From: Macrostomum lignano
Taxonomy: Eukaryota
Assembly: GCA_002269645.1 (NCBI GenBank)
Contig: NIVC01002502.1
Location: forward strand, 1 to 64,000
DNA length: 64,000 nucleotides
Reading direction: 5' to 3'
Below are positions 16,293-55,209 of this stretch, in pieces (the stretch's first letter is position 1; each line of letters opens with the position of its first letter). Below the pieces are notes generated by a model. It was not told the origin of the DNA and did no database searches. It saw nothing but the letters and a program-made list of their open reading frames with translations. Position numbers and translations under genes: made by a program.

Positions 16293-16507
16293 CGTTTAAC
16301 AAGCATTTCAGCCTTGCCATCGTCAATGGAAATGCCCAACTGGCTGAATGCCTCTTTAATTTCAGCCGCATCAATGTAGCCGTCCATCTTTTTGTCAATT
16401 TTGCGAAACACCTGACTCAACTGTTCTTCATGGTCGAGCACCCAGCTGGCGAATTCTTTGAAGTCCAGGGTGCCATCTTGGTTGGAGTCACCCTCCGCAA
16501 CCAGTTG
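16293..16507 (-). CDS. SCaMC: SCaMC exon 2 (EF-hands 2-3)
   Basis: Acceptor CGACAG|CAA. Encodes DSNQDGTLDFKEF and DKKMDGYIDAAEI (EF loops). Donor CG|GTGTGT, phase 2. Confidence 0.9.
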
Positions 16508-17263
16508 CTGTCGATGGGGAAAGCATGAAAAATTATTGCTTATATTGTACTATAATATGTTAGTATACAAACATATACTTGAAAAATAAGGAAATACGCC
16601 TATTTGCATTTTATTGTATAGATCTTGCTAAGAGGTTTTCAAAAACATTTAGTTCATGAAAATTGATCTAAAACTAAAAGTTATGAACACTTTTCTATGA
16701 GTTTTTTGTTTGACTTTTTGTGCATTTTTTGTGCAGTGATCTATTGGGAGCACGAGACTTGCCCGCAGGCGAACTGCCCGCCGAGATTTGCCCGCAGGAG
16801 ATTTGCCCGTCGAGATTTGCCCGCCGAGGTTTGCCCGCAGAGATTTGCCCGCAGTGCATTCTGCCCGCAGGAGATTTGCCCGTCGAGATTTGCCCGTCGA
16901 GATTTGCCCGTCGAGATTTGCCCGTCGAGATTTGCCCGTCGAGATTTGCCTGTCGAGATTTTCCCGCAGAGATTTTCCCATCGAGATTTTCCCGTCGAGA
17001 TTTGCCCGCAGAGATTTGCCCGCAGAGATTTGCCCGCAGAGATTTTCCCGCAATGCAGTTTTAATCTTGCAAAAATCGACTTATACTTATCGAAATTATT
17101 TACCTGCCAGATTTCAACCGTGTGAATCTGAAACTCTTACTGCCGCAAATGCATAAGATATTTCTTTGGCATTCCGCAGACACCTCAAATTTCCTTTCTG
17201 CTAAATTACTGTAGCCTGTTCTATAATCTTTTGTAGCAGCAATTTTTTGCTGGTGCCTGGTGG

Positions 17264-17471
17264 TAGGGATGGTAAAATCCCGGCTAGTTTCCAATCCCAG
17301 GATTGTCGGGTTCGGGATATTCCTGTCCAACTCCCATAAAATCCCCAGCATTTTCAGTCCCAGCAAATCCCGAAAAATTGAAATCCCGCTGAATGGTGGG
17401 CAATTTTAAGTCCTGAGATTGGAATTCCAGGTGTTTGCTCTCAAATCCCGGTCCCGGTATTGGAATCTCTA
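17264..17471. mobile_element. ~210-bp hAT-like MITE at the inner end of the left Mutator TIR
   Basis: Ends TAGGGAT...ATCTCTA. Flanks CCTGGTGG/GCTGGTGG (7/8 match). The right-hand TIR reads straight through this point (TTGCTGGTGGAGC). Confidence 0.5.
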
Positions 17472-18189
17472 GCTGGTGGAGCGCTGTCTGTTTCAAATTC
17501 ACATGTCAGCCGCCTGGATTTTATCACCTCGATCTGCTCAACCACCGAACGACAAATCCAGTAAATAAGCCATGGAGTCCTATATGGTGCATGTCGGGGA
17601 CCCCACGACATTTTATAATCTGGCCCTTACATAGAGTATGAGTATGCAGAGCATTTTCTAAAAACATCGCCTTGTGCATGTGGCGACGGGCAGCTGGCTT
17701 ATCTATATAACAAATTTAATGAAATTTAAAGACCTGCTTATTAACTCCTCGCTAAAGATCCAGAAAGCAGTGTAAACAAAGTCTGATGTGATTCTTTCTC
17801 GCTAATTCTATCCTGGACCCCTATATCTCAATTCCCAGTCTTCGATAAAATGTCCATAAAATCTGTCTGGATTTCATTCTCTCTGGGTCTGGGTCTGGGT
17901 CTGGGTCTCTCATTCTCTCTTCTCTTTCTGATTGGCTGCAGGCACCCCACCCCTTTAGCCTCCTTCTTGTCTTGCGTGCCCCTCATTCCTTTGATCGCGC
18001 CTCCTAACCCAACCCCTCTCTTTGCCCACCCCTCCTTTCTCTCAACCCCCTGTTATCTCCTATAATATATAAATACACTGCCCTTCCTTACTGCTTAGTG
18101 TATTCAACTTTAGTCTGGTCAAGTTAGACTGCGACAACTCTACATATATAAAGTGAATTTCAAGACAACGTTAATAACAAGCAGACCAC

Positions 18190-19626
18190 ATGGAAGCAGC
18201 TCCTCCCATCGCTGTGCGCTTTAGTGCAACAATTCGTGGGAAGCGCAAAGCAGCCTGCGAAGGCTACTACTTTACACTTGAAAGAACTAGCCTGGTCGAC
18301 GAAGAGGTGTCATTTTGGCAGTGTGAAGAACGGCGCTTGGGATCATGTCCTGCTCGAATCCACATCCGGAATGGCTTTAAAGTGCGACAGCTGAATGACC
18401 ACAATCACGGACCTGACGGCTCTCGATTCCAAGTTCTTGAGGCTCTTCGGGAGATTAAATCGGATGCCAGGAACACCGTGAATTCGACGGCAAATATCGT
18501 CATGGAACACACAAATGGGCTGTCTGAGTGTGCAGGCATAGCCCTTCCATCTCAAAGCGCATTAAAGCGGCAAGTTCAAGATGTTCGTCAAACGCACCAA
18601 GGTCTTCCAGTACAGCCGCTCAACCGAGCCGAGCTCATTATACCTGAAGAATTTCAATTCAACAACGGAGCACTGTTTCTGCTGCATGACTCCGGACAGG
18701 ACAACAATCGAATTTTAATCTTCGGTAGCGAGGATAACATTCAAGCCCTGCAATTGGCGACAGATTTCTTCTCGGACGGCACATTCGATGCCTCGCCGCC
18801 ACTGTTCGCTCAACTGGTGACAGTGCATGCCGAACTTCAAGGCTTCATAAGACCACTCATCTACGCATTGCTACCCAACAAGACCGAAGCAACGTACTGT
18901 CGATTTTACGAGGCTCTGCATCAATTGGCGCCGAACATGAGGCCACTTCGCTGGATGTCAGATTTTGAGCGAGCTAACATGAATGCTGTTCAGCATGTCT
19001 TTGGCATCGAGTCAACAGGCTGTCTATTTCACCTCGTTCAGTGCGTGTACAGAAGAGCAGTTGCTGAGGGATTAAAGCGTCAGATTGAAGAAGATGGCGA
19101 GATGTCCGTCTGGCTGCGTTGCCTTTCTGCTTTGGCCTTTGTGCCTATTAATAGTGTTCCAGCAGCATTTGATGAGTTAATAATGCTGCCTGACTTTCCT
19201 GCGGAGATGGCTTCAACAGCAGACTATTTTGAAGCCCAGTGGGTCGGCCATCGACTTCCTGGCGGAGGAAGACGGCAGCCTCGATTCTCACCTTCAATTT
19301 GGAATGTTCGTGAGCGAACTTTGAATGGACTTCATCGCACGAACAACGCAGTTGAAGCCTGGCATAGGAGGTTCCAGTCAATTCTGGGTTGCAGCAATCC
19401 GAATGTTTTTCGGCTCATGAAGGACCTCAAAAAGGAAGTCGAACACCAGGCACTGCTGATGCAGCGAGCCAACGCTGTGAAGCACCGAAGGAGCGGAAGA
19501 GATACGTGCAGAGCAACGCGATGCTTCTTCGCGTCACGCAGCGTTGGAACGTCGAAGGTGGCGGTCTGCCTGCTGACTTTCCTTTGCGTTCCTATGAGGG
19601 GCATCGCTCACCATTTGAAGAAGTGA
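18190..19626 (+). CDS. MULE transposase with N-terminal FLYWCH zinc finger, 478 aa
   Basis: FWQC...CPAR...DHNH (FLYWCH). FSDGTF, WMSDFE, CLFH (CxxH) and RTNNAVEAWH are the Mutator DDE motifs. Confidence 0.92.
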   Translation: MEAAPPIAVRFSATIRGKRKAACEGYYFTLERTSLVDEEVSFWQCEERRLGSCPARIHIRNGFKVRQLNDHNHGPDGSRFQVLEALREIKSDARNTVNSTANIVMEHTNGLSECAGIALPSQSALKRQVQDVRQTHQGLPVQPLNRAELIIPEEFQFNNGALFLLHDSGQDNNRILIFGSEDNIQALQLATDFFSDGTFDASPPLFAQLVTVHAELQGFIRPLIYALLPNKTEATYCRFYEALHQLAPNMRPLRWMSDFERANMNAVQHVFGIESTGCLFHLVQCVYRRAVAEGLKRQIEEDGEMSVWLRCLSALAFVPINSVPAAFDELIMLPDFPAEMASTADYFEAQWVGHRLPGGGRRQPRFSPSIWNVRERTLNGLHRTNNAVEAWHRRFQSILGCSNPNVFRLMKDLKKEVEHQALLMQRANAVKHRRSGRDTCRATRCFFASRSVGTSKVAVCLLTFLCVPMRGIAHHLKK

Positions 19627-21377
19627 TCTGATTGACAACGGTAGCTATCCTTACAATTTTGGTTTCTTGCTGCACTACACTAAGAAGCAATAAATTTAAT
19701 ATTCTGTGCTCTAGTTTCATTGTGGCCTATATAATAATAGTTCCCGCTTCCATGGGATTCGCAAAGGCATTCACTTTGTGCACTTTAAACCCTCGTATTT
19801 AGCACTGCGGTTGCTTCTAGTTTCTGAAATTTGGTTAGGTCAGAGAAGTTCAGTGAACCCACAGTCTTCTGCCTACATAACAACTCACCCCTCCTCCCCA
19901 TTCCCTTCCCTTCCTCTTGTAGGTTGCCATTGTAACTGTATCACTGAATGCTTTTGTTGCCATGTACTCCGTCATCCACCTGTTCCTGTCTTGCGATGCA
20001 CAGTAAATGTTAACAATTGGTCAATCATTTTCATATTGTTTTCATTATTGCTCAATCAAAAGTTATCGTTAAGCGAATGCAAAGTGAAAAATGCAGTAGA
20101 GTACAAAGTTGTTTTAAGTAATTGAACCCAAGGACTTGATTGAAAGGGAATGAATAGGGAAGGATCAAATGGATGTGCTGGCGCTGCACATCGGAAGATT
20201 TGCTCCTTAGGGGTGCTAAATTCCGTTAATGTGTGAGCTAAGTAGAGTGAAAATTGCTAATTTACCTACTGCAATTCATTTTCGCTTGTATTATGCATGC
20301 ATAGTGATTGTACAATCGCTGTTGAACCTGTTAATTCGCAATTAATGCCAATGATACCTACAGCCTCACCATCTTTTGACTTGCGACGCTTAAATACCTT
20401 GTTCTACTTTTTGCCAAGTGAATGTACAAAAATAGCTATTGTATTGTGCGGTTCTGTCAAGGGAAAAATAAAGTCATTACCTTATTAAAATATGCGACAA
20501 GCTATGTGAGCTGCTCCACCAGCAAAAAATTGCTGCTACAAAAGATTATAGAACAGGCTACAGTAATTTAGCAGAAAGGAAATTTGAGGTGTCTGCGGAA
20601 TGCCAAAGAAATATCTTATGCATTTGCGGCAGTAAAAGTTTCAGATTCACACGGTTGAAATCTGGCAGGTAAATAATTTCGATAAGTATAAGTCGATTTT
20701 TGCAAGATTAAAACTGCATTGCGGGAAAATCTCTGCGGGCAAATCTCTGCGGGCAAATCTCGACGGGAAAATCTCGACGGGAAAATCTCGACGGGAAAAT
20801 CTCTGCGGGAAAATCTCGACAGGCAAATCTCGACGGGCAAATCTCGACGGGCAAATCTCGACGGGCAAATCTCCTGCGGGCAGAATGCACTGCGGGCAAA
20901 TCTCTGCGGGCAAACCTCGGCGGGCAAATCTCGACGGGCAAATCTCCTGCGGGCAAATCTCGGCGGGCAGTTCGCCTGCGGGCAAGTCTCATGGACCCGA
21001 TCTATTAACATCCACAATAATTGGATAAATTGTCAAAAAAGGAGTCAAAAATTTATGAAAAAATTAAAAAGAACAATCAAAGAAAGCATATGAAAAACAT
21101 TGCATACATGGCTACATTTCATACATAGTTTTAGATATTTAGATATATTTTAATAACTTATATATAGTTTTTATATTCTTTGCATTTTATTTTATACAGA
21201 ATTTTTGTTTGTTAAAGAAAAAACACTTATTTTTATTAGTTATTTCACTGTTTTTTTATTTTTTTGGCTTATTAAAGTTTTTACCTTAGAGATTTAAAGA
21301 ATATATGACCATTTGTGGTAGAGTTGCTTGCTTAATTAATAGCAAATAAATAAAGCTTAAAATCAACATTTATGGCG

Positions 21378-21425
21378 AAAACCAACGCGTTTCAACCCAC
21401 TAGGGCCGTCCTCAGGGTATATTTT
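21378..21425 (-). ncRNA. Minimal type-I hammerhead ribozyme motif (left arm, minus strand)
   Basis: Minus strand reads ACC-CUGAGGA-C-GGCCC-UAGU-GGGUU-GAAA-CGCGUU-GGU: conserved core, stem II, palindromic ACGCGU stem III, and stem I ACC/GGU. Activity not tested. Confidence 0.7.
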
Positions 21426-21448
21426 ATCACTGAACGAAAGTGATACGT

Positions 21449-21664
21449 CAGTTCAGCTGCCGCCTACCAGCTGGAACAATTTGCGTCTCAGTTAGAAAGG
21501 AAGAGAAAGGCGGCCGATCATTCTCTAAGCTCGGCTTTGTGAACATCCATCTCGCAGGGATCGGTTGCCTCAACTAGCCCGAGCAGCGAGCCTTCATTCT
21601 CACGCCATACAGTCCCAACCAGCGGCTGGACAATTCAACTTTAAGACTGAGTCTCTGCCTGAAA
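21449..21664 (+). pseudogene. 216-bp copy of FAM102 exon 1 (source 27566-27781)
   Basis: Base-by-base match to 27566-27781 with three C>T changes, one creating an in-frame TAG. Confidence 0.95.
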
Positions 21665-21680
21665 AGTTTTGTTCAGTGAT

Positions 21681-21728
21681 AAAATATACCCTGAGGACGG
21701 CCCTAATGGGTTGAAACGCGTTGGTTTT
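21681..21728 (+). ncRNA. Minimal type-I hammerhead ribozyme motif (right arm, plus strand)
   Basis: CTGAGGA at 21691-21697; stem II GGCCC/GGGTT with loop TAAT; GAAA at 21713-21716; ACGCGT mini stem III; predicted GUU cleavage after 21722; stem I ACC/GGT. Confidence 0.7.
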
Positions 21729-21888
21729 CGCCATAAATGTTGATCTTAAGCTTTATTTATATGACCATTTAGAAATATGACCTTCTAAACTAAAGCAAAA
21801 ATTGCCTTAGGTAGAAAATTTACTACAGAGTAAGATAGGACCTTACTTTTTTTTATAAAGCCTAGTTAGACAAAGAAAAACCCTTGTT

Positions 21889-24625
21889 CCATAGTCAGGA
21901 AGGTGGCACAGTATGAGCTGGAATAATTTTTTTGGGACGATTTATGTGCCATCTATGTGCCATTTGTGTGCTGTCTGTGCGCCATCTGTGCGCCACTCGT
22001 CACGAGTAGTTTTCTAAGAAAGGCCTTTGTATGAAAAGCCTTTTTAAAATTTTACGCATATTTTCATTTTAAACAAACTTAAATTATACCTATAAATAGA
22101 ATAATGCAAAATTTACATCTTTAGCGATAATTTATACTAATTTTATTTACTGTTAATTTTAAAGAAACAAAAAGTTTATCACTGATTTTCTAGACTATAC
22201 AAATCTCCTTTATTTTACGTAAAATTGTTAATTTGCATTACAATTTTCATGCATGTCAGGGACCTTATGTGCCGCAATTATGTGCCACATGCGCTAGGGA
22301 CCTCAGTGTGCGCTATGATTGTGCGCCAAGTGCATGGACCCCTTGTGTGCCCCACACTTGTGCGCCAATGTGCGCCGAGACCCTTTGTGTGCGCAGGAAT
22401 TTTCCTCAGAGGTAGGGGGTAAGACCCAGTCCCGGGCCCGGGCCCGAAAAGTCGGGAATCCCGACCAAAATCGTGGCCCGACCCGGGCCCGGGCCACCCT
22501 AAAAAAGTCGGGAAATCGGGACAAGTCTTTTTTAATAAAGAAATACTTGAAACATGTTTTTACTTTGTTATTTTCGGTAAAATATTTTTGCTTTTCGTTT
22601 TTAAGTTAATAAAAATATTTTTTTAGTTCTTACAGCAAGCACAAACACTCAGTTAAGCAAATTCATCAGCTCAAACTCGCACTGCACGACTGCAGTAATA
22701 GTAATAGATGATATGATGTGAAGTAGCAATATCATTGATTCGTAGTAGGCTCTAAGCGTGAGCGTCTGTGACCGTGAGCGTCAGCCACAGCCAGTTTCCA
22801 CTTTCCAGGAAGATCGGATTTTTTCCAGGAAGATAAAATTAAAACATAGTTGATGCAATATTGATTTTTACAGCTTGCAGTAAAAGCAAATATGTATTCT
22901 TAAAAAATTGTCAAAACTTTTGTAAATAAATTCCTATTTACGTTCCAAGAAGTCCTTTAAGGGCCAAGTGACCATTTTTCCAAGAAGTTTGCTATCTATC
23001 AGAGTTTGTAATCGTGTTCATATTTGTATTGTATTCGTAGGTAGTTGTAGTTGTAGACTCAGTATCGTATTCGTAATCATATTCGTTTAGGTAGGTAGGT
23101 GAGCAGGTGGCAGGTATCAGCTAATTACTTGTATTTCCATTGTCTGTTTGCCTGTTCTGTTGAGACAGTTAGTGTTGTGTTGTGTTGTCACTTCACTTGT
23201 GTTCTGTTCTGTTGTCTTGTCTTGTTGTCTTACTGAATACTGACTGTGTACATGGCTCTTTACATTGAAGCTATGTAAAGAAACTAAAAATTCAAATAAA
23301 AGAATCAATCAATTGATTTGGTTCTTACTTCCTTACTGCTTCCAATGCCAAGTGCCTTACACTTAATGCTTCAGCTTTTCTTCTTTTTGCTTACTGCCAC
23401 TGCCAGTGCCAGCTGCACTACCGCAGTGCCTGCTTGCCTACCTCACTGCCTGTTAAGTGTTAGTGTCACTGTCACTGGCACACACACAGTACTTGTGCCA
23501 CACAGTGACATTGAATTTGAACTATTGAGTATATTGATATTTGAGTATTAAGTCTTTTAATTCTCTTATCATTCTGAAGTTAACTAATGTAAAATAAAAA
23601 AATATTTTTATTATAATAGGTAACTTAGTTAAGTAACGCAAGTTATTTTTAATTATTTTTTTTAACTTATGGAATGTTCATTCAATATCTTCAAATCCTA
23701 GGTGCCATAACTCTAGGTTTAGGTGATATTGTGCATGACTAGTCTCTATTATGTTCATTCTGATGTATGCATCACTCGTTTAGAGATTTAAAGAGATTAG
23801 AGAAAATCTTGTCTCCCGCCTTATACACTTTGGCCTCCGGTCGTATCAGTTCATTCTGACTATGCCCTTGATAGGTGTTAAATCTGATAAACAATTAGCT
23901 TGTATTAAACATTTATTTTGATACCTTTCTAACACTAGAAAGTGATACGCATGAAAAATATTTCATTGCATAATGCATAAGCAAAATAAAAATTTGTTTG
24001 CAAGACTTTGTTTAGACATAAAGAATTTAGTATTTCTATGCAATGCGTTAAAGAGAACATTAAGAGCAATTGCATTTGGATATGTTATAATGTTTAAGGC
24101 AATAATAGAAATTTCTGCTACGATCTTTCAACTACAATTTCCAATTTTACGATTAACTTGCATGCATATTCTAAGCCATACAAAATTATCAAAATATGAT
24201 AAAATTAGATAAATATTATCAAAGTTATAGAAATTAAAAATTTTATTACAGTTTGCTGAATTTCCACCGTTGCTGACTTTCTCCTGTGCATGCTTCATCC
24301 TTGTTCACCGTGATGTCCTCTTGCATATGTCTGTGCGTCATGGCGCATGGCGCGCGTAGCGCGCCATGCGCCATGACTATGAGGAAAAAGAAAAAGTGCG
24401 CCGGACGCCGTCCGTGAAAATACCACTTATTCCAATAGGGCATGTCAGGGACCTTATGTGCCGCAATTATGTGCCACATGCGCTAGGGACCTCAGTGTGC
24501 GCTATGATTGTGCGCCAAGTGCACCAAGGACCCCTTGTGTGCCCCACACTTGTGCGCCAATGTGCGCCAAGACCCTTTGTGTGCGCAGGAATTTTCCCCC
24601 TCAGAGGCCACCTTCCTGACTATGG
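21889..24625. mobile_element. Putative non-autonomous DNA transposon with 19-bp TIRs CCATAGTCAGGAAGGTGGC
   Basis: Perfect 19-bp inverted repeats at 21889-21907 and 24607-24625. Flanks CCCTTGTT/CCCTTGAT (7/8). TGTGCGCC-rich subterminal repeats. No transposase ORF. Confidence 0.5.
22413..22501. mobile_element. Small GC-rich hairpin MITE (TAGGG...CCCTA ends, CCCGGGCCCGGG arms)
   Basis: Inverted CCCGGGCCCGGG motifs and TAGGG/CCCTA termini. Confidence 0.4.
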
Positions 24626-24951
24626 CCCTTGATAGGCATGTCAAATATAAAGATAAGAATACTGATAAACATATAAAATAGGTCTAAGATAAAAATAGAT
24701 ATTAAACATTTATTTTGTCTATTACCTTTCTATCTGTCCATACTCAGGAAAGTGATACGCATGAGTGGGAAAATATGAGTGGGAAAATATGAGTGGGAAC
24801 ATATACATAATGCATGAAGCTAAAGTAAAAATTTAAAAATAATAGATTAATTTTGTTAATTTTTAGCCTTTTTCTAATTTAAAACTTAATGTTTTAAGCT
24901 CATTAAAAATTATCAAAAAATATTGACTAAAATTTTATCATTAATTATGGT

Positions 24952-26117
24952 CAGTGTTGGGCACTTCCGTTACCGAGTAACTTGTAAATGGTAACGCAAG
25001 TTACTTTTTCGTGAAGCGTTCCTTACGCAAGTTACTTTCCTATTTTGGTAACGGAGTAACGGTAAGTTACTCAAATTTTGGAAGTCCGTTACAGTTACTT
25101 TGCAACAATCGCAATATTTAAATTTAAAACTGATATGCTTAGCTATTACGCCAGTTGTCACATTTTTAGCATTTTTCATTCTTAAATTCAAAACTAAGTG
25201 AATAATATCATACAGTATTACGCTGTAATTAATAAAGAAATACTTGAAACATGTTTTTACTTTGTTATTTTCGGTAAAATATTTTTGCTTTTCGTTTTTA
25301 AGTTAATAAAAATATTTTGTTTAGTTCTTAGAAACAAACAACCAAAGAAAGAAATTCATCTGTAGTCTCCACAAATCCACTCAGTGATCGACGTAGCCAG
25401 GAATTTTAATTGGGGGGGGGTTGGCCTGGCTGGCCATGCCTCATGCACCCGCCACGCCCAACCCCACCCCCCTGGTGGGGTGTCTTGCAGGTGGGGTGAA
25501 GTTGCCGCCCAAACGATTGTTAAGGCGGCCTCCCTGGCTACACCACTAAAGTCCACTGGCACTGCACTGCACTGCACAATAATTTAATATTAATGAATTG
25601 AAAAATAATTGAAAAATTGAAAAAAATTTCAAATAATTGAAAATAAAAAGACTAGTAAAGCAGACTGTAGAGTGGAGTAAAGCCAGGTACTTATTACGAG
25701 CGATGTATTATCAAGGACAACTGAAGTTACGTTAAGTTGTCCTTGTGTATTATAACTTATAATGTTATTAAAAATTAAATTGCGTTTTGCCTTTAACGTT
25801 TCTGACCTTCAGCTTCTCTTCTTTTTACGGAAAGGGCCTAAAGTGATTAAAATTTAATACAGTTACTGAAATTAATTTTGTTGTATTTTTCCTTCTGGCT
25901 TTCGCGATCATTTGTGCTGTTCCAGCACATTTGCAATGTTAAAAAAGCAGAAAATTTTGTTTATAACATAGGTAACGGAAGTAAGTAACGGAAGTAACTT
26001 AAAAGTTACCGGGTTTTTGTTCAAAGTTACTAGGCTAACGTAAGTTACTTTTTAAAAAGTGGTAACTTAAGTTACAGTAACGCAAGTTACTTTTTTTGAG
26101 TAACTTGCCCAACACTG
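24952..26117. mobile_element. Non-autonomous hAT element, 1166 bp
   Basis: 12-bp TIRs CAGTGTTGGGCA. Perfect 8-bp TSD ATTATGGT at 24944-24951 and 26118-26125. Subterminal GTAAC/GTTAC repeats at both ends. Confidence 0.9.
25384..25549. mobile_element. GC-rich MITE nested in the hAT element (CGTAGCCAGG...CCTGGCTACACCACT ends)
   Basis: Degenerate inverted ends resembling CAGTGGCGTAGCCAGG-type hAT MITEs; TSD not resolved. Confidence 0.4.
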
Positions 26118-27286: not shown

Positions 27287-28071
27287 ATGTTCAGTTGCGT
27301 GCGTCACGCTTCAAATGAATCCCGAACTAGTGCTAAGCGCCAGCAGTATAAATGTGACGTCGAGCTAACTCTAAATGGCATGGAAGGTGTCACCCTTAGC
27401 AATGGGGTACTGTTTGCAAAGGTTCGCCTACTGAGCGGTGGCCAGTTCTGCCGGTACTCAAGCCGGCGCGAGATTCGCGACAATCGGGTCACGTGGTCCG
27501 GCACCGACTGCAGCGCAGTAACCAATGGCAACGGTGACTCCGGCGAGCCCTACGAGCCGCCGTTGCAGTTCAGCTGCCGCCTACCAGCCGGAACAATTCG
27601 CGTCTCAGTTAGAAAGGAAGAGAAAGGCGGCCGATCATTCTCTAAGCTCGGCTTTGTGAACATCCATCTCGCAGGGATCGGTTGCCTCAACCAGCCCGAG
27701 CAGCGAGCCTTCATTCTCACGCCATACAGTCCCAACCAGCGGCTGGACAATTCAACTTTAAGACTGAGTCTCTGCCTGAAATGCGACGCCTTGGACTGGG
27801 AGTCGGTCGCTGAGAATCGGCTGTTCATGGAGTGCGGATCGTCTCCGGAGACGCCGCCACCGCCGCCACCACAGCAGCTGCAGCCTGCAGTGTATCATCA
27901 TCAAAGCTCGCAGCCATCTCAGCAGGCGTCGCCCCTGTCGCTACCGGCGCCTCTACTCGTCTCCAACTGGCGCCGACAATCCGACTGCTCGAGCGTGCTG
28001 TCCGGTGCCTGTCCAGGGTTCGATAGTCGTGCCGGTAGCTTGGGTAGAGGAGACTCTGCTGCACTCATCGG
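27287..28071 (+). CDS. FAM102A: FAM102/EEIG-family NT-C2 protein, exon 1
   Basis: NGVLFAKVRLLSGG, IRVSVRKEEKGGRSFSKLGFVNIHLA and RLDNSTLRLSL match the FAM102A/SYM-3 NT-C2 domain. Donor GG|GTGAGT at 28071/28072. Confidence 0.9.
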
Positions 28072-28754
28072 GTGAGTATTTGCTTCAAGCCAAAACAACA
28101 GAACCAATGCTAAAACCCGAGGACGAACGAGTCATGAAATACCGATTTTTCCTATTTATCCATTCGTGAGATCTAGTGACATCCACCTGTTCTATCTGAG
28201 AGTCTTAAGTCGATCTACACGAAATCGAGGAAGGATGCTCAATATAATATCTTCTCATCTTCTATTGTCACAGCGTCACAGCAATGCATGAAAGGGGTTC
28301 ATTTTAATTCTAATTTCATTTTAAAAAAGAAAATAAAGTATAGGAGAAGATTGATGCAAGAGCCGGGAAGAGAGCTAGGCGCATCAGCTCATGGCTAATC
28401 CAGCAGCGCCCATGCCGATCGGCCGGTCTGCCGGGAGCCGCTAAGATGGATCGGGAATGCCGGCTTAAACCGAGAGGCGCTGCCCAATGCGCCTCTGGCT
28501 GCTGGCTGAGTCGAATTGGACTCTGCGAGTGGAGCCTTAAGTTGAAAGCTGTTCAAGCAAGTGATGCAATTATAGGGGAGATGGAAATGGGAGTCAGCGT
28601 CTGCAGCGGAAGGCGAGTGAAGGAGGCCATTCGAGCCTGAGCATAGAGTAAATTTAGAGTGCTCGGTAAGGGACTCATTGCGAAAGGAAGGATCTTGGAG
28701 GGACGGAAGATCTTAGAAGGCAATATAAGCATAGCAAGTGACTTACTGACAGAT

Positions 28755-44005: not shown

Positions 44006-44380
44006 GTAGACTGAAAGTTTCATTTTTAAGTTTTGCTGCATGCTTCTTGAGGAACAAAACAAAAATTTCACTTGTGATCGTATCCTCAACTTGGCTTGGG
44101 CGATGAAAAAATATAAAAATGAAACTTCTCACACTGCACAACTATATCAACATGTGCACGCTAAAATGGTAATTAATATTCACTGCCTCAGATCAAATTC
44201 AATCATAGATTTTGGGATGAAAAAATTGATTTTTCCTGTCGTCTCCACAGTGTTTTTTCCCGGATTATCAACCTCGTAAAAATTTACACGATCTTTGAGT
44301 TTTACGTACGTCGATCCTGCAGTTACTACAGATTGGTCCTTCTTGGTACATGTAAAATGTGTAGATGTGCAACATATATT

Positions 44381-45889
44381 GCTACCCACCGAGGCGCTCG
44401 TCACTACCCACCGAGGCGCTGCGGATCCACTGCGTGGCCACTGAGGTCGCCAGAGTGATGAACCGCGTGCTTTCCGGTGAGGTGGCGCCAAACGAATGGA
44501 CCACGGCGCACATCGTCGCCATTCCAAAGAAGCCGGGCACCACCAAGCTCGAGGAGCATCGAGGCATCTGCCTACAGTCCTGCGCCGCGAAGCTGTTCAA
44601 CCACATGCTGCTATCGCGGTTACAGCCTGTGCTGGACCCCTACCTGCGGCCTGAGCAGAACGGATTCCGGCCCCATCGCGGCACAGTGACGCAGATCCTG
44701 GCTCTTCGGCGAGTCATCGAGGAGGCGCACATCCGCCAGTTGACCCTAATCCTGATCTTCGTCGATTTCAGGAAGGCCTTTGACTCGGTCGTGAGGGACG
44801 CGCTCCCAGAGGTGCTCCGTGCGTACAACGTGCCAGAGCTGCTGATTTCTGCTGTCATGGCGCTGTACCACGGCACGACGGCTGCTGTCTCAACACCGGA
44901 CGGCCTATCGGATTTCTTCGAGACATCCTCCGGGGTGCTCTGGGGAGATACGCTAGCGCCGTTCCTATTTATTCTGGTGCTTGACTGGGTGCTACGGACT
45001 GCTCTGCCTTCCAACGACGACGGCTTCCTGCTGCGGCGACGCGTGGGTCGACGCCAACCGGAGAGACGGCTCAGCGTGCTTGGCTACGCCGATGACCTTG
45101 CCCTGCTGTCCTCGACCGTCAAGGGCGCCCAACGACAGCTGGATAGGCTGGTTGCCGTTGCGGCGAGCGTCGGCCTGGTGGTCAACACGCAGAAAACCGT
45201 CGTGCTATGCGTGCCGGACGACACCGAGGCTGCAATCTTCTGCCGAGGCGCTAACGGACAGGCGAGTGAGCTTCCAAGATGCCAGCAGTTCGTCTACCTT
45301 GGCGGTCTGGTTCCCGACGTCCGCGAGGATCTGCGGCGTCGCCGAGGACTTGCCTGGGCTGCCTTTCGTTCTATAAGGTCAGTCCTGCAGTCCGAGGCCC
45401 TACCGGACCGCCGCTGTTCCAGGGCGGCGCTGTTCCAGGCGGTGATCGAGACCGTCCTGTTATACAACGCCGAGACCTGGACGCTGACAGACTCGCTCGA
45501 GGCTCAAGTCGACGCGGCGCACGCTGGCCTGCTGCGCGCCGCCTTCAAGATCGGCAACGAGCGAGTCACCAACACGGCGCTCTATCATCGCGCCGGCCTG
45601 GCCCGTCCTAGCGATCTGCTGCGCCGTCGGCGACTCCAGCTGGCAGGCCACGTCATCCGCGCTGAGGCCTACTGTCCGGAGCCGGTGCAGGAGGTGCTCC
45701 TACTTACGTTGCAGGCACCCTACCGGCGGGGACAGGCGAGGACTCGGCGCTACGTCGACTGTCTGCTGGCTGACGCCGGCGCCCCGGACTCTGCCGGCGG
45801 TGCGGCCTTTGTTCGCGCCCAAGCTTCGAAGCGCGCCATCTGACGCTGCTTTTGCGAACTGACAGCGTACTCTGTTGTTGTTGTTGTTA
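44381..45889 (+). mobile_element. 5'-truncated RTE-like non-LTR retrotransposon (RT domain only) with (GTT)n tail
   Basis: ORF 44365-45843 has IPKK, EQNGFRP, FVDFRKAFDSV, LAPFLF, YADD and YLG RT motifs. No endonuclease. The usual QGD reads WGD. GTTGTTGTTGTTGTT follows the stop. Confidence 0.88.
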
Positions 45890-49581: not shown

Positions 49582-51043
49582 AAACGCGGCGCTGCCAGCA
49601 AGCAGCGGCAACAGAGCGGCGGCGGCGGTACAGCCGCTTCAAAAAAGAAGTCGGCCTCCTCAGCCTCTAGCGACCTGCAGGCCTGGTGCGTGTGCCGATC
49701 TACCGACATTGACAGATTTATGATCGCCTGCGACAAATGTGAGGAGTGGTACCACGGCGACTGCATCGGGGTCAGCTCGAAGGACGCGGCCGCTATTAAC
49801 AAGTTCTATTGTTCAAAGTGCTTGAAAAAGCATCCGGGCTTGGCTATTCAGTATAAGAAAGGCCGGGCGCCGGTTGCCGTCGCTCAGACTGGCTCAGCCT
49901 CCCGGAAGCGCGGCCAGTCCCAGCAGGCCGGCTCCGAGGACAAGAAAACCGCTGCGGCCAGTTCTGCGAAGGCTTCAAAATCCGGCGCTAATCACAGCGG
50001 CCAGCCAGCAGCCAAGCGCAAGCGGGCATCCGAGGCGGCAGCAGCGGCATCGGCGCCGACTCCGCCAGCCAGAGGAAGAAAGAGAAAATCGGCGGCGACC
50101 ACCGATTCAACTTCTAAACAGGCCGCTGCAGTTGCTGCCGCTTCTAACGCCGCCGCTCCGGCTGGTGAGCCCAAGAAGCGCGGCCGCCGGGCCGCCAGTG
50201 CCGGCAAGCAGCAGCAACAACAACAGCAGGCAACAAAAAACTCACGGAAGCAGCAACAGCCGTCGATGCCAGCGCTGGTGCCCAATGCCAATGAGGATGA
50301 GGACGAAGACGATTTCGGGCTGCCGCAGGCGGAGGACCTTCTGCTGCCCGCCGAGCGCCGCAGCCGCTCCTCGGCCGCTTCGTCCACCGAGACCGACGAC
50401 GATCATCGGCGCGGCATCTCCGACGACGACGACGACTCCGACGACTCGGATTTGGACGATGACGACATTGACGATGGGTTGGGCGTTGGCGGCGCTGGCG
50501 ACGGCCCAGCTGCCAGACGCTGCGGCCGGTGCGCGCCCTGCCTTCGGGTCAGCGACTGCGGCCGCTGCGACTTCTGTTTGGACATGCCGAAATACGGCGG
50601 CAGGAATCGCCTGCTGGAGCGGCAGCGCTGCCGCATGCGCCAGTGCGTAACGCTCGACTTAGCGCTCAACGCCGCAGGTCGTCGCCGACGTCGCAAAGCC
50701 GCCGCCGTCCGGCCGTCCGGGCCGGGCCGGGCTGCCAGGCAGCCGGCCGCAGCCACCTCCGCCAGCCTCTGGTCCGACACTCCCGTGCCCTACGCTCTGC
50801 CCTACGCCGACCACACCTACTGCCGGCATCACGGTCGCGGCGGAACCGCTGCTACATCCGCCGGTGCCGCTGCAGGGCTGCCGCCTCCGCCAGCCCCCCG
50901 CCGCGACGGGAGCCGTGGCGTCCAGTTCGCGCAAATCCGCCTTGACCGCCGCCGCTGCCGCCGCCGACATGGTTGGATTCTACACTCTGCATCCGGAGTC
51001 TGACAATCTCGACATCACCTGGCCCAAGGATGCTGACGCGGAA
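49582..51043 (+). CDS. CXXC1: PHD-finger + CXXC zinc-finger protein (CXXC1/Cfp1-like), large exon; apparent +1 frameshift at the C6 run 50894-50899
   Basis: Acceptor TTTTCTTAG|AAA. PHD: CVCRSTDIDRFMIACDKCEEWYHGDC...FYCSKC. Acidic tract. CXXC: RRCGRCAPC...DCGRCDFCLDMPKYGG...CRMRQC. Donor GAA|GTATAA. Confidence 0.85.
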
Positions 51044-51904: not shown

Positions 51905-52215
51905 GGTCGATGCATTGCTTGGGTGGAGTAGTCGGGTTCACGATTTGAAGGTTGGGGGTTCGATTCCCGATCCCACTCGGAACAATTAGTGTCCTTGAGA
52001 AAAGGCACTTAACTCTGCATTGCTTCAGTTCACCCAGCTGTAAAATGGGTGCCAGCATTAGCTGGGGTAATTGAGGGGTGTGTAGCGACCCCCCAGTCCT
52101 TGGACTGAACAGCCGTAGACAGCCTTCAGAAGCGCCGCGCAATAGCTGCGGCTGAGCTGTCGGTTGCATATATCGCCCAACTGGGGTAGATGAAATCAAT
52201 TGTTATTGTTATTGG
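51905..52215 (+). mobile_element. tRNA-derived SINE with CORE-like central domain
   Basis: A-box-like TGGAGTAGTCGG and B box GGTTCGATTCC. GTGTCCTTGAGAAAAGGCACTTAAC...CAGCTGTAAAATGGG resembles the MIR/CORE domain. (ATTGTT)n tail. Confidence 0.7.
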
Positions 52216-54568: not shown

Positions 54569-54854
54569 CTGCGGGCGGGTGGAAGTGCTTTGGCTTGGCT
54601 GGCTTTGAGAATGGCGGATTTAAAAATAAGGAAATTGAATAATGGAAAGTTTTGTTACAATGGTAGATTGATTTTTGAAAAATAGCATATTGATGTTGAA
54701 AATGGCAAATTGATTTCTTAAAAATGGCAGATCGGTATTGAAAACTGGCAGATTGCTGTTAAAAAGGGCAGATTGGTATTGAAAAATGGCAGATTAATAT
54801 TAAAAATGGCAGATTGGTATTGAAGATGGCAGATTTATATAGAAAAAATGGCAT

Positions 54855-55209
54855 TTTTTTTAGAGGCAGGGGGTTGTGTGCACCCTGGCGCAATTTAAGC
54901 GTCATTGGCGCACAACCGGCGAGAGGCATTACTGCCCATTCCGCCGAATCCCCTGAGCAGGCACACAAGCGCGCGGATACGTTACGCAGGCACACACTCA
55001 CACAGGAGTGTACAGCGGCCCTAACTTTATTAGTTGTTAGGCATGTACACTTCACTGCGCCTTGGGGGTTGGCTCTCAAGGCCGTTAATTGCACAAGCGA
55101 GCCAAGCCGAAATTCCAATTCAGCCCCAAATTAATGTGGCTGCACTTGGAATCGAGCCTGGGTCGCGGCACACCAGAGCAGCTGCGCTACCGCTGGGCTA
55201 CGGCCCCCC
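54855..55209 (-). mobile_element. tRNA-derived SINE with poly(A) tail, inserted in a 21-bp AAAAATGGCAGATTG-type array
   Basis: Minus strand GGGGCCGTAGCCCAGCGGTAGCGC...GGCTCGATTCC (A and B boxes). T-run at 54855-54861. 13-bp TSD GAAAAAATGGCAT at 54842-54854 and 55210-55222. Confidence 0.75.

What the first reader, a model, noticed from the sequence alone, without database searches (positions are those of the whole stretch)
21302..21770. Host exon fragment packaged between two inverted hammerhead-ribozyme arms (candidate Penelope-type 'pack' cassette)
Seen in sequence: a 13-bp direct repeat; a 31-nt extension (21315-21345); a 90-bp arm; 216 bp copied from FAM102 exon 1, which lies 6 kb away; and an inverted 90-bp arm (88/90 identical). 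Each arm carries a CUGAGGA...GAAA core with a palindromic ACGCGU mini stem III, pointing outward. Established knowledge: Penelope-like elements carry minimal type-I hammerheads in their pLTRs and often insert with one pLTR inverted and a ~30-40-nt tail on the other. Inference: this is such an insertion whose RT/GIY-YIG body has been replaced by host sequence, i.e. a non-autonomous, ribozyme-flanked gene-capture unit. I know of no description of this exact arrangement, but cannot search the literature.
Basis: partly seen in the sequence, partly recalled or inferred. Interest (0 to 1): 0.92.

Follow-up and report, generated by a model that had tools for sequence, protein, structure and literature searches.

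The report
Truncated Penelope-type insertion holding a gene fragment
A flatworm genome carries a tiny dead-on-arrival Penelope-like retrotransposon insertion: two inverted 94-base element ends with hammerhead-like motifs that enclose 216 bases copied from a gene 6 kb away. It is a neat fossil of how these elements integrate, but not a new kind of gene-capture machine.

Summary
An exact 13-bp direct repeat flanks a 31-nt one-sided extension, two inverted 94-97-nt arms (3 transitions) and 216 bp that are 98.6% identical to part of an NT-C2 (EEIG1/FAM102-type) exon 5.9 kb downstream on the same strand.

Each arm carries one outward-facing minimal type-I hammerhead-like motif. These are the only two in 64 kb, with none in 300 simulations.

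The anatomy matches published Penelope-like element (PLE) insertions: inverted 5'-truncated copies, a 30-40-bp tail on one end, a target duplication in AT-rich DNA, and the ribozyme motif near the 3' end. It also matches the in vitro finding that a PLE protein nicks and extends both strands from two start sites.

No PLE-associated homologue of the arms could be tested, because the source genome cannot be searched here.

The 'ribozyme-flanked gene-capture unit' reading is not supported:
- The ribozymes face away from the cargo.
- A transcript through the cassette folds into a long hairpin.
- The source lies only about 6 kb away, which argues for a one-off capture in place.

Host sequences between PLE terminal repeats with target duplications were already described in Adineta vaga (2013), and opposite-strand hammerhead pairs in Schistosoma (2014). 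I rate this a new member of a known kind, of moderate interest.

The parts
21302..21314 (.). Left copy of the target-site duplication, TATATGACCATTT
   Evidence: Exact 13-nt direct repeat. Its 3' end would be the top-strand primer for the left cDNA (inference from PMC11167929).
21315..21345 (-). 31-nt 'tail'. In sense it reads TTGCTATTAATTAAGCAAGCAACTCTACCAC, continuing the left arm outward. It contains a 5-bp stem (TTGCT/AGCAA) and an AC-rich end.
   Evidence: Present on the left arm only. It matches the 30-40-bp one-sided tail of PLE insertions (PMC8557442), which is 31 bp in A. vaga Pen2a (PMC3846280). The tail is explained as the stretch between two RT start sites (PMC11167929).
21346..21439 (-). 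Left arm: 94-nt 3'-terminal copy of the element; its sense strand is the minus strand
   Evidence: Inverted repeat with 21667-21760. Three transitions separate the arms.
21384..21415 (-). Minimal type-I hammerhead-like motif of the left arm (helix II loop UAGU). Predicted cut after 21384 on the minus strand.
   Evidence: Descriptor hit. Not detected by Rfam.
21440..21448 (.). 9-nt junction filler, GTGATACGT. GTGATA is the reverse complement of 21425-21430, giving a 7-bp hairpin (21425-21431 / 21439-21445).
   Evidence: Read from the sequence. Small palindromes at inverted PLE junctions are described and attributed to self-priming (PMC3846280).
21449..21664 (+). Captured 216-bp fragment of the NT-C2 gene exon, in the sense orientation and co-linear with the sense of the right arm. 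It has three C-to-T changes, one of which creates a stop codon.
   Evidence: 98.6% identity to 27566-27781.
21665..21666 (.). 2-nt junction, AG. The G also matches the source, so the copy may be 218 bp with one more mismatch.
   Evidence: Alignment.
21667..21760 (+). Right arm: 94-nt 3'-terminal copy of the element; its sense strand is the plus strand. It has no tail, and its last 3 nt overlap the target duplication.
21691..21722 (+). Minimal type-I hammerhead-like motif of the right arm: CUGAGGA-C-GGCCC-UAAU-GGGUU-GAAA-CGCG-U-U. Predicted cut after 21722.
   Evidence: Descriptor hit; 0 hits in 300 simulations. Not detected by Rfam, but Rfam also misses the motifs next to PLE ORFs in L001 and L006.
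21758..21770 (.). Right copy of the target-site duplication
27566..27781 (+). Source of the captured fragment, inside the first coding exon (ORF 27287-28075) of an NT-C2 / EEIG1-FAM102-type gene

Best explanation
This is the product of one abortive integration by a Penelope-like element's RT/GIY-YIG machinery in a Macrostomum-like flatworm genome.

Proposed sequence of events:
1. The endonuclease made staggered nicks 10-13 bp apart in AT-rich DNA.
2. Both 3' ends primed reverse transcription of the 3'-terminal part of the element's RNA.
3. The top-strand primer started at the distal RT start site, giving the left arm plus the 31-nt tail. The bottom-strand primer started at the proximal site, giving the right arm without a tail.
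4. Both cDNAs stopped at the same template position, about 24 nt upstream of the hammerhead core. This suggests a short template RNA with a defined 5' end.
5. The right-hand cDNA then jumped to the sense transcript of the neighbouring NT-C2 gene (less likely, to its DNA) and copied 216 nt.
6. It was joined to the left cDNA through a 9-nt filler that includes a 6-nt snap-back.

The result is a non-coding, immobile chimera. The hammerhead-like motifs are passengers inherited from the element's terminal repeat and do nothing for the cargo.

Shown: the anatomy, the non-random ribozyme motif, the copy relationship and its orientation.
Inferred: PLE parentage of the arms, priming on both strands, the RNA template jump, and that all steps belong to one event.
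For: Anatomy confirmed.

Match to published PLE insertions:
- Strong 5' truncation, an adjacent inverted copy, a 30-40-bp tail at one end, and the HHR near the 3' end (PMC8557442).
- A 31-bp tail, 8-10-bp TSDs and palindromes at inverted junctions in A. vaga (PMC3846280).

Match to biochemistry: the Anolis PLE protein cleaves and extends both strands, prefers AT-rich targets, and initiates at two internal sites whose spacing is the tail (PMC11167929).

The ribozyme motif:
- It is non-random: 2 hits versus 0 in 300 simulations.
- The same architecture lies 3' of RT ORFs in two PLE-like contigs. L001 has reverse-complement telomeric repeats and terminal direct repeats. L006 was reached independently, through protein homology to a PLE relic in M. 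lignano.
- L002 shows the same dual outward arrangement with a 292-nt spacer.

Timing and place:
- Arm-to-arm divergence (3/94) is about twice the copy-to-source divergence (3/216, all changes in the copy). This is as expected if the arms and the capture date from one event.
- The source is only 5.9 kb away on the same strand. The fragment's sense strand is co-linear with the right arm's sense strand, as needed for an RT jump from element RNA to gene mRNA.
Against: - No autonomous PLE, or any other copy of the arm, is in the window or in 92 kb of M. lignano DNA. PLE parentage therefore rests on anatomy, not homology.
- The fragment lies within one exon, so RNA and DNA templates cannot be told apart.
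- Both ends of the fragment are internal to the mRNA, and neither junction shows convincing microhomology.
- The equal inner end points of the arms are not explained by independent truncation. They require an extra assumption (a short template) or a different route (a palindrome formed by snap-back).
- The motif has G10.1-U11.1 instead of the conserved G-C pair and only 3 bp in helix I. The predicted minimum-energy monomer and dimer folds are not the hammerhead fold.
- Divergence counts are tiny (3 versus 3).
Confidence: 0.58

Rival explanations
1. Two-step, DNA-level origin. A PLE-type insertion first formed a head-to-head palindrome: an inverted pair made by snap-back or self-priming, which would explain the equal arm lengths. 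The unstable centre of the palindrome later broke, and repair synthesis copied 216 bp from the nearest accessible DNA, the exon 5.9 kb away.
For: - The arms end at the same position on both sides, and the cargo sits exactly at the centre of symmetry.
- There is a small snap-back hairpin at the left inner junction.
- Palindromes at inverted PLE junctions are documented (PMC3846280).
- The template is close by in cis.
- No intron is spanned, so a DNA template is not excluded.
Against: - A simple snap-back copy should also duplicate the tail on the right side, and it is absent there.
- The fragment's orientation matches what an RNA jump requires, whereas DNA repair would give either orientation.
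- The divergence counts give no sign of a later second event, although the numbers are small.
Confidence: 0.2
2. The cassette belongs to a mobile, non-autonomous PLE-derived family ('Pack-PLE'). Its inverted terminal repeats are sufficient in cis for mobilisation in trans, and it carries host exon fragments around the genome.
For: - In A. vaga, pLTRs alone sufficed to integrate an intron-containing NRPS gene and non-coding host sequences, with TSDs and a verified empty site (PMC3846280).
- Dual opposite-strand min-HHRs 100-700 bp apart recur in Schistosoma and in metagenomic locus L002.
Against: - The source lies 5.9 kb from the copy. For a unit that transposed after capture, this would be a chance of roughly 1 in 10^4 to 10^5 in a genome of hundreds of Mb (inference).
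- There is only one copy in 64 kb, and none in 92 kb of M. lignano DNA.
- With both arms pointing outward, a sense transcript from either arm runs away from the cargo. A read-through transcript is a hairpin.
- Each arm retains only about 24 nt upstream of the ribozyme core.
Confidence: 0.12
3. This is a DNA transposon derivative (MITE or foldback type). It has about 95-bp terminal inverted repeats, and its interior was replaced by filler DNA during abortive gap repair.
For: - Inverted repeats plus a flanking direct repeat.
- A MULE with ~550-bp TIRs lies 260 bp away.
- Filler DNA copied from nearby sequence is typical of gap repair (established knowledge).
Against: - The sequences abutting the two direct repeats are not inverted copies of each other, because the left end has 31 extra nt.
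- A 10-13-bp duplication is unusual for cut-and-paste families (established knowledge).
- The arms share nothing with the MULE TIRs.
- This model does not explain the non-random hammerhead motif with PLE-specific quirks.
Confidence: 0.05
4. This is an assembly or read chimera that created an artificial inverted structure.
For: PLE tandem and inverted structures are known to trouble assemblies (PMC8557442).
Against: - The arms differ by three substitutions.
- One arm has a tail.
- The structure is bounded by an exact target duplication.
- The copy differs from the source at three sites.
Chimeric reads give perfect palindromes without such features.
Confidence: 0.03

Closest known systems
[quoted passage not shown]
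   Same: - Host DNA lies between PLE terminal repeats and is bounded by a target-site duplication.
- There is a 31-bp tail on one inverted pLTR.
- Small palindromes occur at inverted junctions.
- No internal PLE sequence is retained.
   Different: - In the rotifer, whole intron-containing genes (NRPS, LRR) or non-coding DNA lie between two direct pLTRs plus one inverted pLTR of ~200 bp, and the copy is at a new chromosomal site with a proven empty allele.
- Here there are only two inverted 94-nt ends and a 216-bp exon piece, with the source 5.9 kb away.
- Here the parent PLE has not been identified.
Canonical PLE insertion architecture and its in vitro basis (Craig et al. 2021, PMC8557442; Frangieh et al. 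2024, PMC11167929)
   Same: - A 5'-truncated copy with an adjacent inverted copy.
- A 30-40-bp tail at one end.
- An AT-rich target.
- The HHR near the 3' end.
- Both DNA strands nicked and extended, with two RT start sites.
   Different: - There is no RT/GIY-YIG body and no direct pLTR pair.
- Truncation is extreme and identical on both sides.
- Foreign sequence sits at the centre.
Minimal hammerheads of metazoan PLEs, including dual opposite-strand pairs in Schistosoma mansoni (Cervera and de la Pena 2014, PMC4209133)
   Same: - Type-I topology.
- An extra nucleotide between A9 and 10.1.
- A 1-bp helix III with a palindromic loop (ACGCGU), implying action as a dimer.
- A short helix I.
- Two motifs 100-700 bp apart on opposite strands.
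   Different: - G10.1-U11.1 wobble instead of the highly conserved G-C pair.
- Helix II is 5 bp with two G-U pairs.
- Activity has not been tested.
L1 twin priming and chimeric retrocopies made by RT template switching (recalled from the LINE-1 literature, not checked here)
   Same: - Both target 3' ends prime cDNA synthesis, giving inverted segments.
- RT jumps to another cellular RNA create chimeras.
   Different: - L1 twin priming inverts an internal part of one RNA, so the two segments are not identical 3' ends.
- There is no tail and no ribozyme.
- The enzyme class is different.
Pack-MULEs and other gene-fragment-carrying DNA transposons (recalled, not checked here)
   Same: Inverted terminal sequences enclose a host gene fragment.
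   Different: - Pack-MULEs have symmetric TIRs flush with a fixed 9-10-bp duplication.
- They acquire fragments at the DNA level.
- They are multi-copy families with varied cargo.
None of this is shown here.
Metazoan non-LTR retrozymes (Cervera and de la Pena 2020, PMC7229834; Li et al. 2026 preprint, 10.64898/2026.07.22.740005)
   Same: Non-autonomous, HHR-bearing sequences related to PLE pLTRs.
   Different: Retrozymes are tandem direct repeats whose HHRs cut out a unit that circularises. Here the two motifs are inverted, so no unit can be excised.

Membership tests
Penelope-like element (PLE) insertion | ORF with a telomerase-like RT and a GIY-YIG endonuclease (in autonomous copies) | tested here: not met
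   The cassette has no ORF of this kind. tblastn with a PLE-like RT finds nothing in the window, and the only RT in the window is RVT_1/LINE-like. This is expected for a truncated or non-autonomous copy, so it does not exclude PLE origin.
Penelope-like element (PLE) insertion | 5'-truncated copy with an adjacent inverted copy, both 3' ends facing outward | tested here: met
   The arms are inverted, with their sense 3' ends at the outer borders. The definition is from PMC8557442.
Penelope-like element (PLE) insertion | 30-40-bp extension (tail) on one end only | tested here: met
   A 31-nt extension on the left arm only. Compare. That the tail is element sequence could not be checked on other copies.
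Penelope-like element (PLE) insertion | Variable-length target-site duplication in AT-rich DNA | tested here: met
   A 10-13-bp duplication. The local GC content is about 0.36-0.39. The empty site has not been seen.
Penelope-like element (PLE) insertion | Terminal repeat homologous to the pLTR of an RT/GIY-YIG element in the same genome | not testable with these tools
   The source genome cannot be searched. There is no arm homologue in the window, in 92 kb of M. lignano DNA or in the PLE contigs L001 and L006. Only the ribozyme architecture is shared.
Hammerhead ribozyme (type I, PLE minimal variant) | Conserved core C3-U4-G5-A6-N7-G8-A9 ... G12-A13-A14 ... A15.1/U16.1-H17 | tested here: met
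   CUGAGGA ... GAAA-CGCG-U-U in both arms.
Hammerhead ribozyme (type I, PLE minimal variant) | [quoted passage not shown] | tested here: met
   An unpaired C follows A9, and ACGCGU is palindromic. The criteria are from PMC4209133.
Hammerhead ribozyme (type I, PLE minimal variant) | Highly conserved G10.1-C11.1 pair closing helix II | tested here: not met
   GGCCC/GGGUU gives G10.1-U11.1 and G10.2-U11.2 wobbles in both arms. L001, L002 and L006 all have G-C at this position.
Hammerhead ribozyme (type I, PLE minimal variant) | Match to the Rfam hammerhead covariance models | tested here: inconclusive
   No hit at the gathering score or at E<=10, even on 70 nt alone. The same models also miss the motifs 3' of PLE ORFs in L001 and L006.
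Hammerhead ribozyme (type I, PLE minimal variant) | Self-cleavage | not testable with these tools
   Predicted minimum-energy monomer and dimer folds are not the hammerhead fold. Published PLE min-HHRs cleave poorly, and only as dimers or with protein.
Mobile gene-capture ('Pack'-type) element | Several copies with the same termini and different, or the same, cargo at different loci | not testable with these tools
   One copy in 64 kb. The source genome is unavailable.
Mobile gene-capture ('Pack'-type) element | Evidence of movement after capture (the copy is far from its source) | tested here: not met
   The source is 5.9 kb away on the same strand.
Retrozyme (non-LTR, metazoan) | Tandem direct repeats, each with a sense HHR, so that a unit is excised and circularised | tested here: not met
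   The two motifs are on opposite strands, and there is no tandem array at the site.
TIR DNA transposon / MITE | Inverted repeats flush with both copies of the target duplication | tested here: not met
   The left terminus has 31 nt with no counterpart on the right.

The most novel reading that the evidence does not exclude
The cassette is one member of a mobile flatworm family of miniature PLE derivatives. In this reading, two inverted ~95-nt pLTR ends are enough for trans-mobilisation, and they pick up and scatter exon fragments. That would be a retro-element counterpart of Pack-MULEs, able to shuffle exons. Because the unit folds into a hairpin with a gene-derived loop, it could also seed small RNAs against the source gene.
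Probability: 0.08. Interest if true: 0.65.

Novelty: new member of a known kind. Interest (0 to 1): 0.38.

Why it matters
The way PLEs integrate is still poorly understood. The first in vitro system (2024) showed nicking and extension of both strands and two internal RT start sites. This cassette is a small, young and almost undecayed natural product that displays those features in a single event: both ends primed, one with the tail and one without.

It adds one further point. Sequence from a neighbouring gene was copied into the centre of the insertion, which bears on how the two cDNAs are joined. A survey of such mini-insertions in a complete flatworm genome could show how often PLE integration scatters host gene fragments, and whether they come from RNA or from DNA.

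For annotators, the cassette is a reminder that exon-like fragments upstream of genes can be by-products of retroelement integration.

Tried and rejected
- Rfam, whole window at gathering scores and two local scans at E<=10: no hammerhead. I do not count this as evidence against the motif, because Rfam also misses the motifs beside PLE ORFs in L001 and L006.
- Thermodynamic folding of the arms, of dimers and of the whole cassette: no support for an active fold. The arms are not more stable than shuffled sequences. The only strong structure is the trivial arm-arm hairpin.
- Search for further arm copies: none in the window. The viral contig scan was empty. The metagenome scan gave two loci that share only the ribozyme architecture.
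- Search for the same locus or an empty site: five window ORFs are not on record as exact proteins. The fetched M. lignano NT-C2 paralogue loci are too divergent and hold no arm.
- Search for a PLE in the window: none. A degraded RT + GIY-YIG-like element sits in an intron of the M. lignano paralogues, but Pfam does not recognise it and its flanks share nothing with the arms.
- Internal duplicate of the flanks that could serve as an empty site: none. The left flank is instead the right TIR of a MULE.
- DNA-transposon, retrozyme and assembly-artefact readings were considered and rejected, for the reasons given under rival explanations and the membership test.
- GTTCAG is shared by the arm's inner end and the fragment's 5' edge. 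I could not fit it to any strand-consistent template-switch step, and it may be chance.
Full report
**Observation**

- TATATGACCATTT occurs at 21302-21314 and again at 21758-21770.
- Inside these repeats lie two inverted arms, reported as 21343-21439 and 21667-21763 (97 nt, 96%; BLAST E=7e-41).
- Aligning the arms in their common sense orientation gives 94 shared nucleotides (21346-21439 on the minus strand, 21667-21760 on the plus strand). There are three differences, all transitions.
- The left arm continues outward for 31 nt (21315-21345) that have no counterpart on the right.
- The last three bases of the right arm (TAT) coincide with the start of the direct repeat, so the duplication is 10-13 bp.
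- Between the arms, 21449-21664 is 213/216 identical to 27566-27781 in the same orientation (E=1e-106).
- The junctions are 9 nt on the left (GTGATACGT) and 2 nt on the right (AG).
- All three differences are C in the source and T in the copy. One converts CAG to TAG in the source frame, so the copy is a pseudo-fragment.

**The source gene and the organism**

The source lies in ORF 27287-28075, which ends at a GT donor and matches Pfam NT-C2, the N-terminal C2 domain of EEIG1/FAM102 and EHBP1. Its nearest relatives are four Macrostomum lignano proteins at 49-55% identity.

Repeats elsewhere in the window are up to 95.8% identical to M. lignano contigs. The window therefore comes from M. lignano or a close relative, although none of five window ORFs is on record exactly.

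**The ribozyme motif**

Each arm reads ACC-CUGAGGA-C-GGCCC-UAAU (UAGU on the left)-GGGUU-GAAA-CGCG-U-U|GGU. This is a type-I hammerhead core with:
- one unpaired nucleotide after A9;
- a 5-bp helix II;
- a one-pair helix III closed by a palindromic CGCG loop;
- a 3-bp helix I.

I wrote a descriptor after Cervera and de la Pena's minimal hammerhead. It finds exactly these two sites in both strands of the 64 kb and none in 300 first-order Markov simulations.

Rfam finds no hammerhead at its gathering scores or at E<=10, even on the isolated 70 nt. However, it is equally blind to two motifs that lie next to PLE reading frames. The Rfam negative is therefore uninformative.

[quoted passage not shown] Three features fit. 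The fourth does not: the conserved G10.1-C11.1 pair is a G-U wobble here. Predicted minimum-energy folds of monomer and dimer are not the hammerhead fold. Published PLE hammerheads cleave weakly, and only as dimers or with protein. Catalytic competence is therefore open and somewhat doubtful.

**Related loci**

A metagenome scan used the helix II/III pattern, which has 23 specified bases. By my rough estimate it should yield far fewer than one chance hit. It returned two loci.
- **L001.** The motif has an independent 5-bp helix I. It lies downstream of a 625-aa RT ORF, directly after reverse-complement telomeric repeats, in a unit bounded by 109-nt direct repeats. This is the layout described for endonuclease-deficient PLEs. 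Its homologues include Selaginella and Coccomyxa proteins.
- **L002.** The motif lies in one arm of a 124-nt inverted repeat. The other arm carries a decayed copy pointing the other way, with 292 nt between them. This is the same dual outward arrangement as in the window.
- **L006.** I reached this locus independently. A degraded RT plus GIY-YIG-like element sits in an intron of the M. lignano NT-C2 paralogues. Its endonuclease region led to metagenomic PLE contig L006. There, a motif of the same architecture (CUGAAGA-A-GGAUU-GAAA-GAUCC-GAAA-UA-U-U, helix I of 8 bp) lies 340 nt after the ORF and 60-90 nt before the element ends in a microsatellite.

Helices I, II and III all differ in sequence among the window, L001 and L006 while keeping their pairing. 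None of these loci shares arm sequence with the window beyond the motif.

**Comparison with what is known about PLE insertions**

- Arkhipova et al. describe a 31-bp tail, 8-10-bp duplications and palindromes at inverted junctions in Adineta vaga.
- Frangieh et al. show that a purified PLE protein nicks and extends both strands of an AT-rich target. Reverse transcription starts at two internal sites whose spacing corresponds to the tail, and hammerhead mutants do not impair insertion.

The cassette fits point by point. Both outer ends are element 3' ends. One begins 31 nt further downstream than the other. The duplication geometry puts a 3'-OH carrying the duplicated bases on each side. The target is AT-rich.

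**How the exon fragment got there**

The fragment's sense strand is continuous with the sense strand of the right arm. The minus-strand cDNA primed at the right end could therefore have left the element RNA and continued on the gene's sense transcript.

The source is only 5.9 kb away on the same strand. For a unit that had captured the fragment and then transposed, landing this close would be very improbable. For a capture in place, from a nascent transcript or from nearby DNA, it is what one expects.

Arm-to-arm divergence is 3/94. Copy-to-source divergence is 3/216, with all changes in the copy. These figures are compatible with a single event, though the counts are small.

The left junction contains a 6-nt snap-back: GTGATA is complementary to 21425-21430. 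This recalls the self-priming palindromes seen in rotifer PLEs.

One feature is not explained by simple independent truncation: both arms end at the same template position. Either the template RNA was short with a defined 5' end, which would also favour end-to-end template jumping, or the pair arose as a snap-back palindrome whose centre was later repaired using nearby DNA. I keep the second as the main rival. Against it, the right arm lacks the tail.

**What the cassette is not**

- **Not a ribozyme-flanked processing unit.** The motifs are on opposite strands and face away from the cargo. A transcript through the cassette pairs the arms into a ~97-bp stem (-225.8 kcal/mol for the 469-nt cassette).
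- **Not a retrozyme.** There are no tandem direct repeats.
- **Not a TIR transposon.** The termini abutting the duplication are not symmetric, and the arms are unrelated to the neighbouring MULE's TIRs.
- **Probably not an assembly artefact.** That reading does not fit the substitutions between the arms, the one-sided tail or the duplication.

**Novelty**

Two exist.
- Arkhipova et al. [quoted passage not shown]
- Cervera and de la Pena (2014) noted pairs of minimal hammerheads 100-700 bp apart on opposite strands in Schistosoma.

The present case adds a flatworm example, reduced to two 94-nt ends with an identifiable coding fragment and a nearby source. It is a new member of a known kind. Its value is as a clean natural record of PLE integration. 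I rate interest at 0.38.

**Limits**

The decisive test is whether the arms occur at the 3' ends of RT/GIY-YIG elements and whether other cassettes exist. It needs the source genome, which these tools cannot search. Empty-site, long-read and cleavage tests are likewise outstanding.

Noticed in passing
window 16706-21040: A MULE-type DNA transposon lies next to the cassette. A FLYWCH + MULE transposase ORF (18190-19626) sits between ~550-bp inverted repeats (16706-17255 / 20517-21040, 90.8%). Each repeat contains the 14-bp minisatellite GCGGGCAAATCTCG. Its right end is about 260 bp left of the cassette.
   Followed up: partly
window 22251-22624 and 24440-25330: Direct duplication in two blocks: 22251-22412 with 24440-24607 (95-100%), and 22532-22632 with 25229-25330 (99%). 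The block spacings differ (2189 and 2697 bp). This is an unclassified repeat pair or a rearranged duplication between the cassette and the NT-C2 gene.
   Followed up: no
window 54854-55208; 51946-52121: These stretches are 95.8% and 86% identical to Macrostomum lignano contigs (L005 8441-8797; L003 17177-17353). They place the window in M. lignano or a close relative. Even so, the window's NT-C2 gene is only 55% identical to the annotated M. lignano paralogues, and no window ORF is on record exactly.
   Followed up: partly
L003 18693-20531 (also L004 ~16400-16700): A degraded RT plus GIY-YIG-like (PLE-type) element sits inside an intron of the M. lignano NT-C2 paralogues. It carries a fourfold internal duplication (PQKPSYSNIYMGYWEQRGLETS) in the RT. 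A 79-bp piece (20185-20263) is repeated in inverted orientation at 16521-16598. Pfam does not recognise it.
   Followed up: partly
L002 2131-2333 and 4355-4634: Two further near-perfect hairpin inverted repeats (98 nt with a 7-nt loop; 111 nt with a 58-nt loop) lie near the dual-hammerhead locus. Rfam gives sub-threshold miRNA-precursor-like scores (mir-303, 50.9 bits versus a gathering score of 77).
   Followed up: no
window 21734-21757 (+) and 21315-21372 (-): An ATG 14 nt after the predicted cleavage site opens a frame that stays open to the end of the arm and, on the left copy, through the tail (18 codons, MLILSFIYLLLIKQATLP). In several PLEs the ORF starts inside or just after the hammerhead and the pLTR includes its first codons. 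The frame is too short to test.
   Followed up: no
window 21430-21435 / 21451-21456 and 27568-27573: The hexamer GTTCAG is shared by the inner end of the arm (in sense) and the 5' edge of the captured fragment. On the plus strand this gives a CTGAAC...GTTCAG hairpin across the left junction. It did not fit any strand-consistent microhomology step and may be chance.
   Followed up: partly
window 1-64000: The window is unusually dense in strand-skewed minisatellites: 44 TRF rows, including arrays of 12, 15, 20-28, 34, 44 and 70 bp spanning 1-3 kb each. It also holds an IS1595-like DDE ORF (1753-2724), a LINE-like RT (44365-45843) and a PHD + CXXC gene exon (49690-51003).
   Followed up: no
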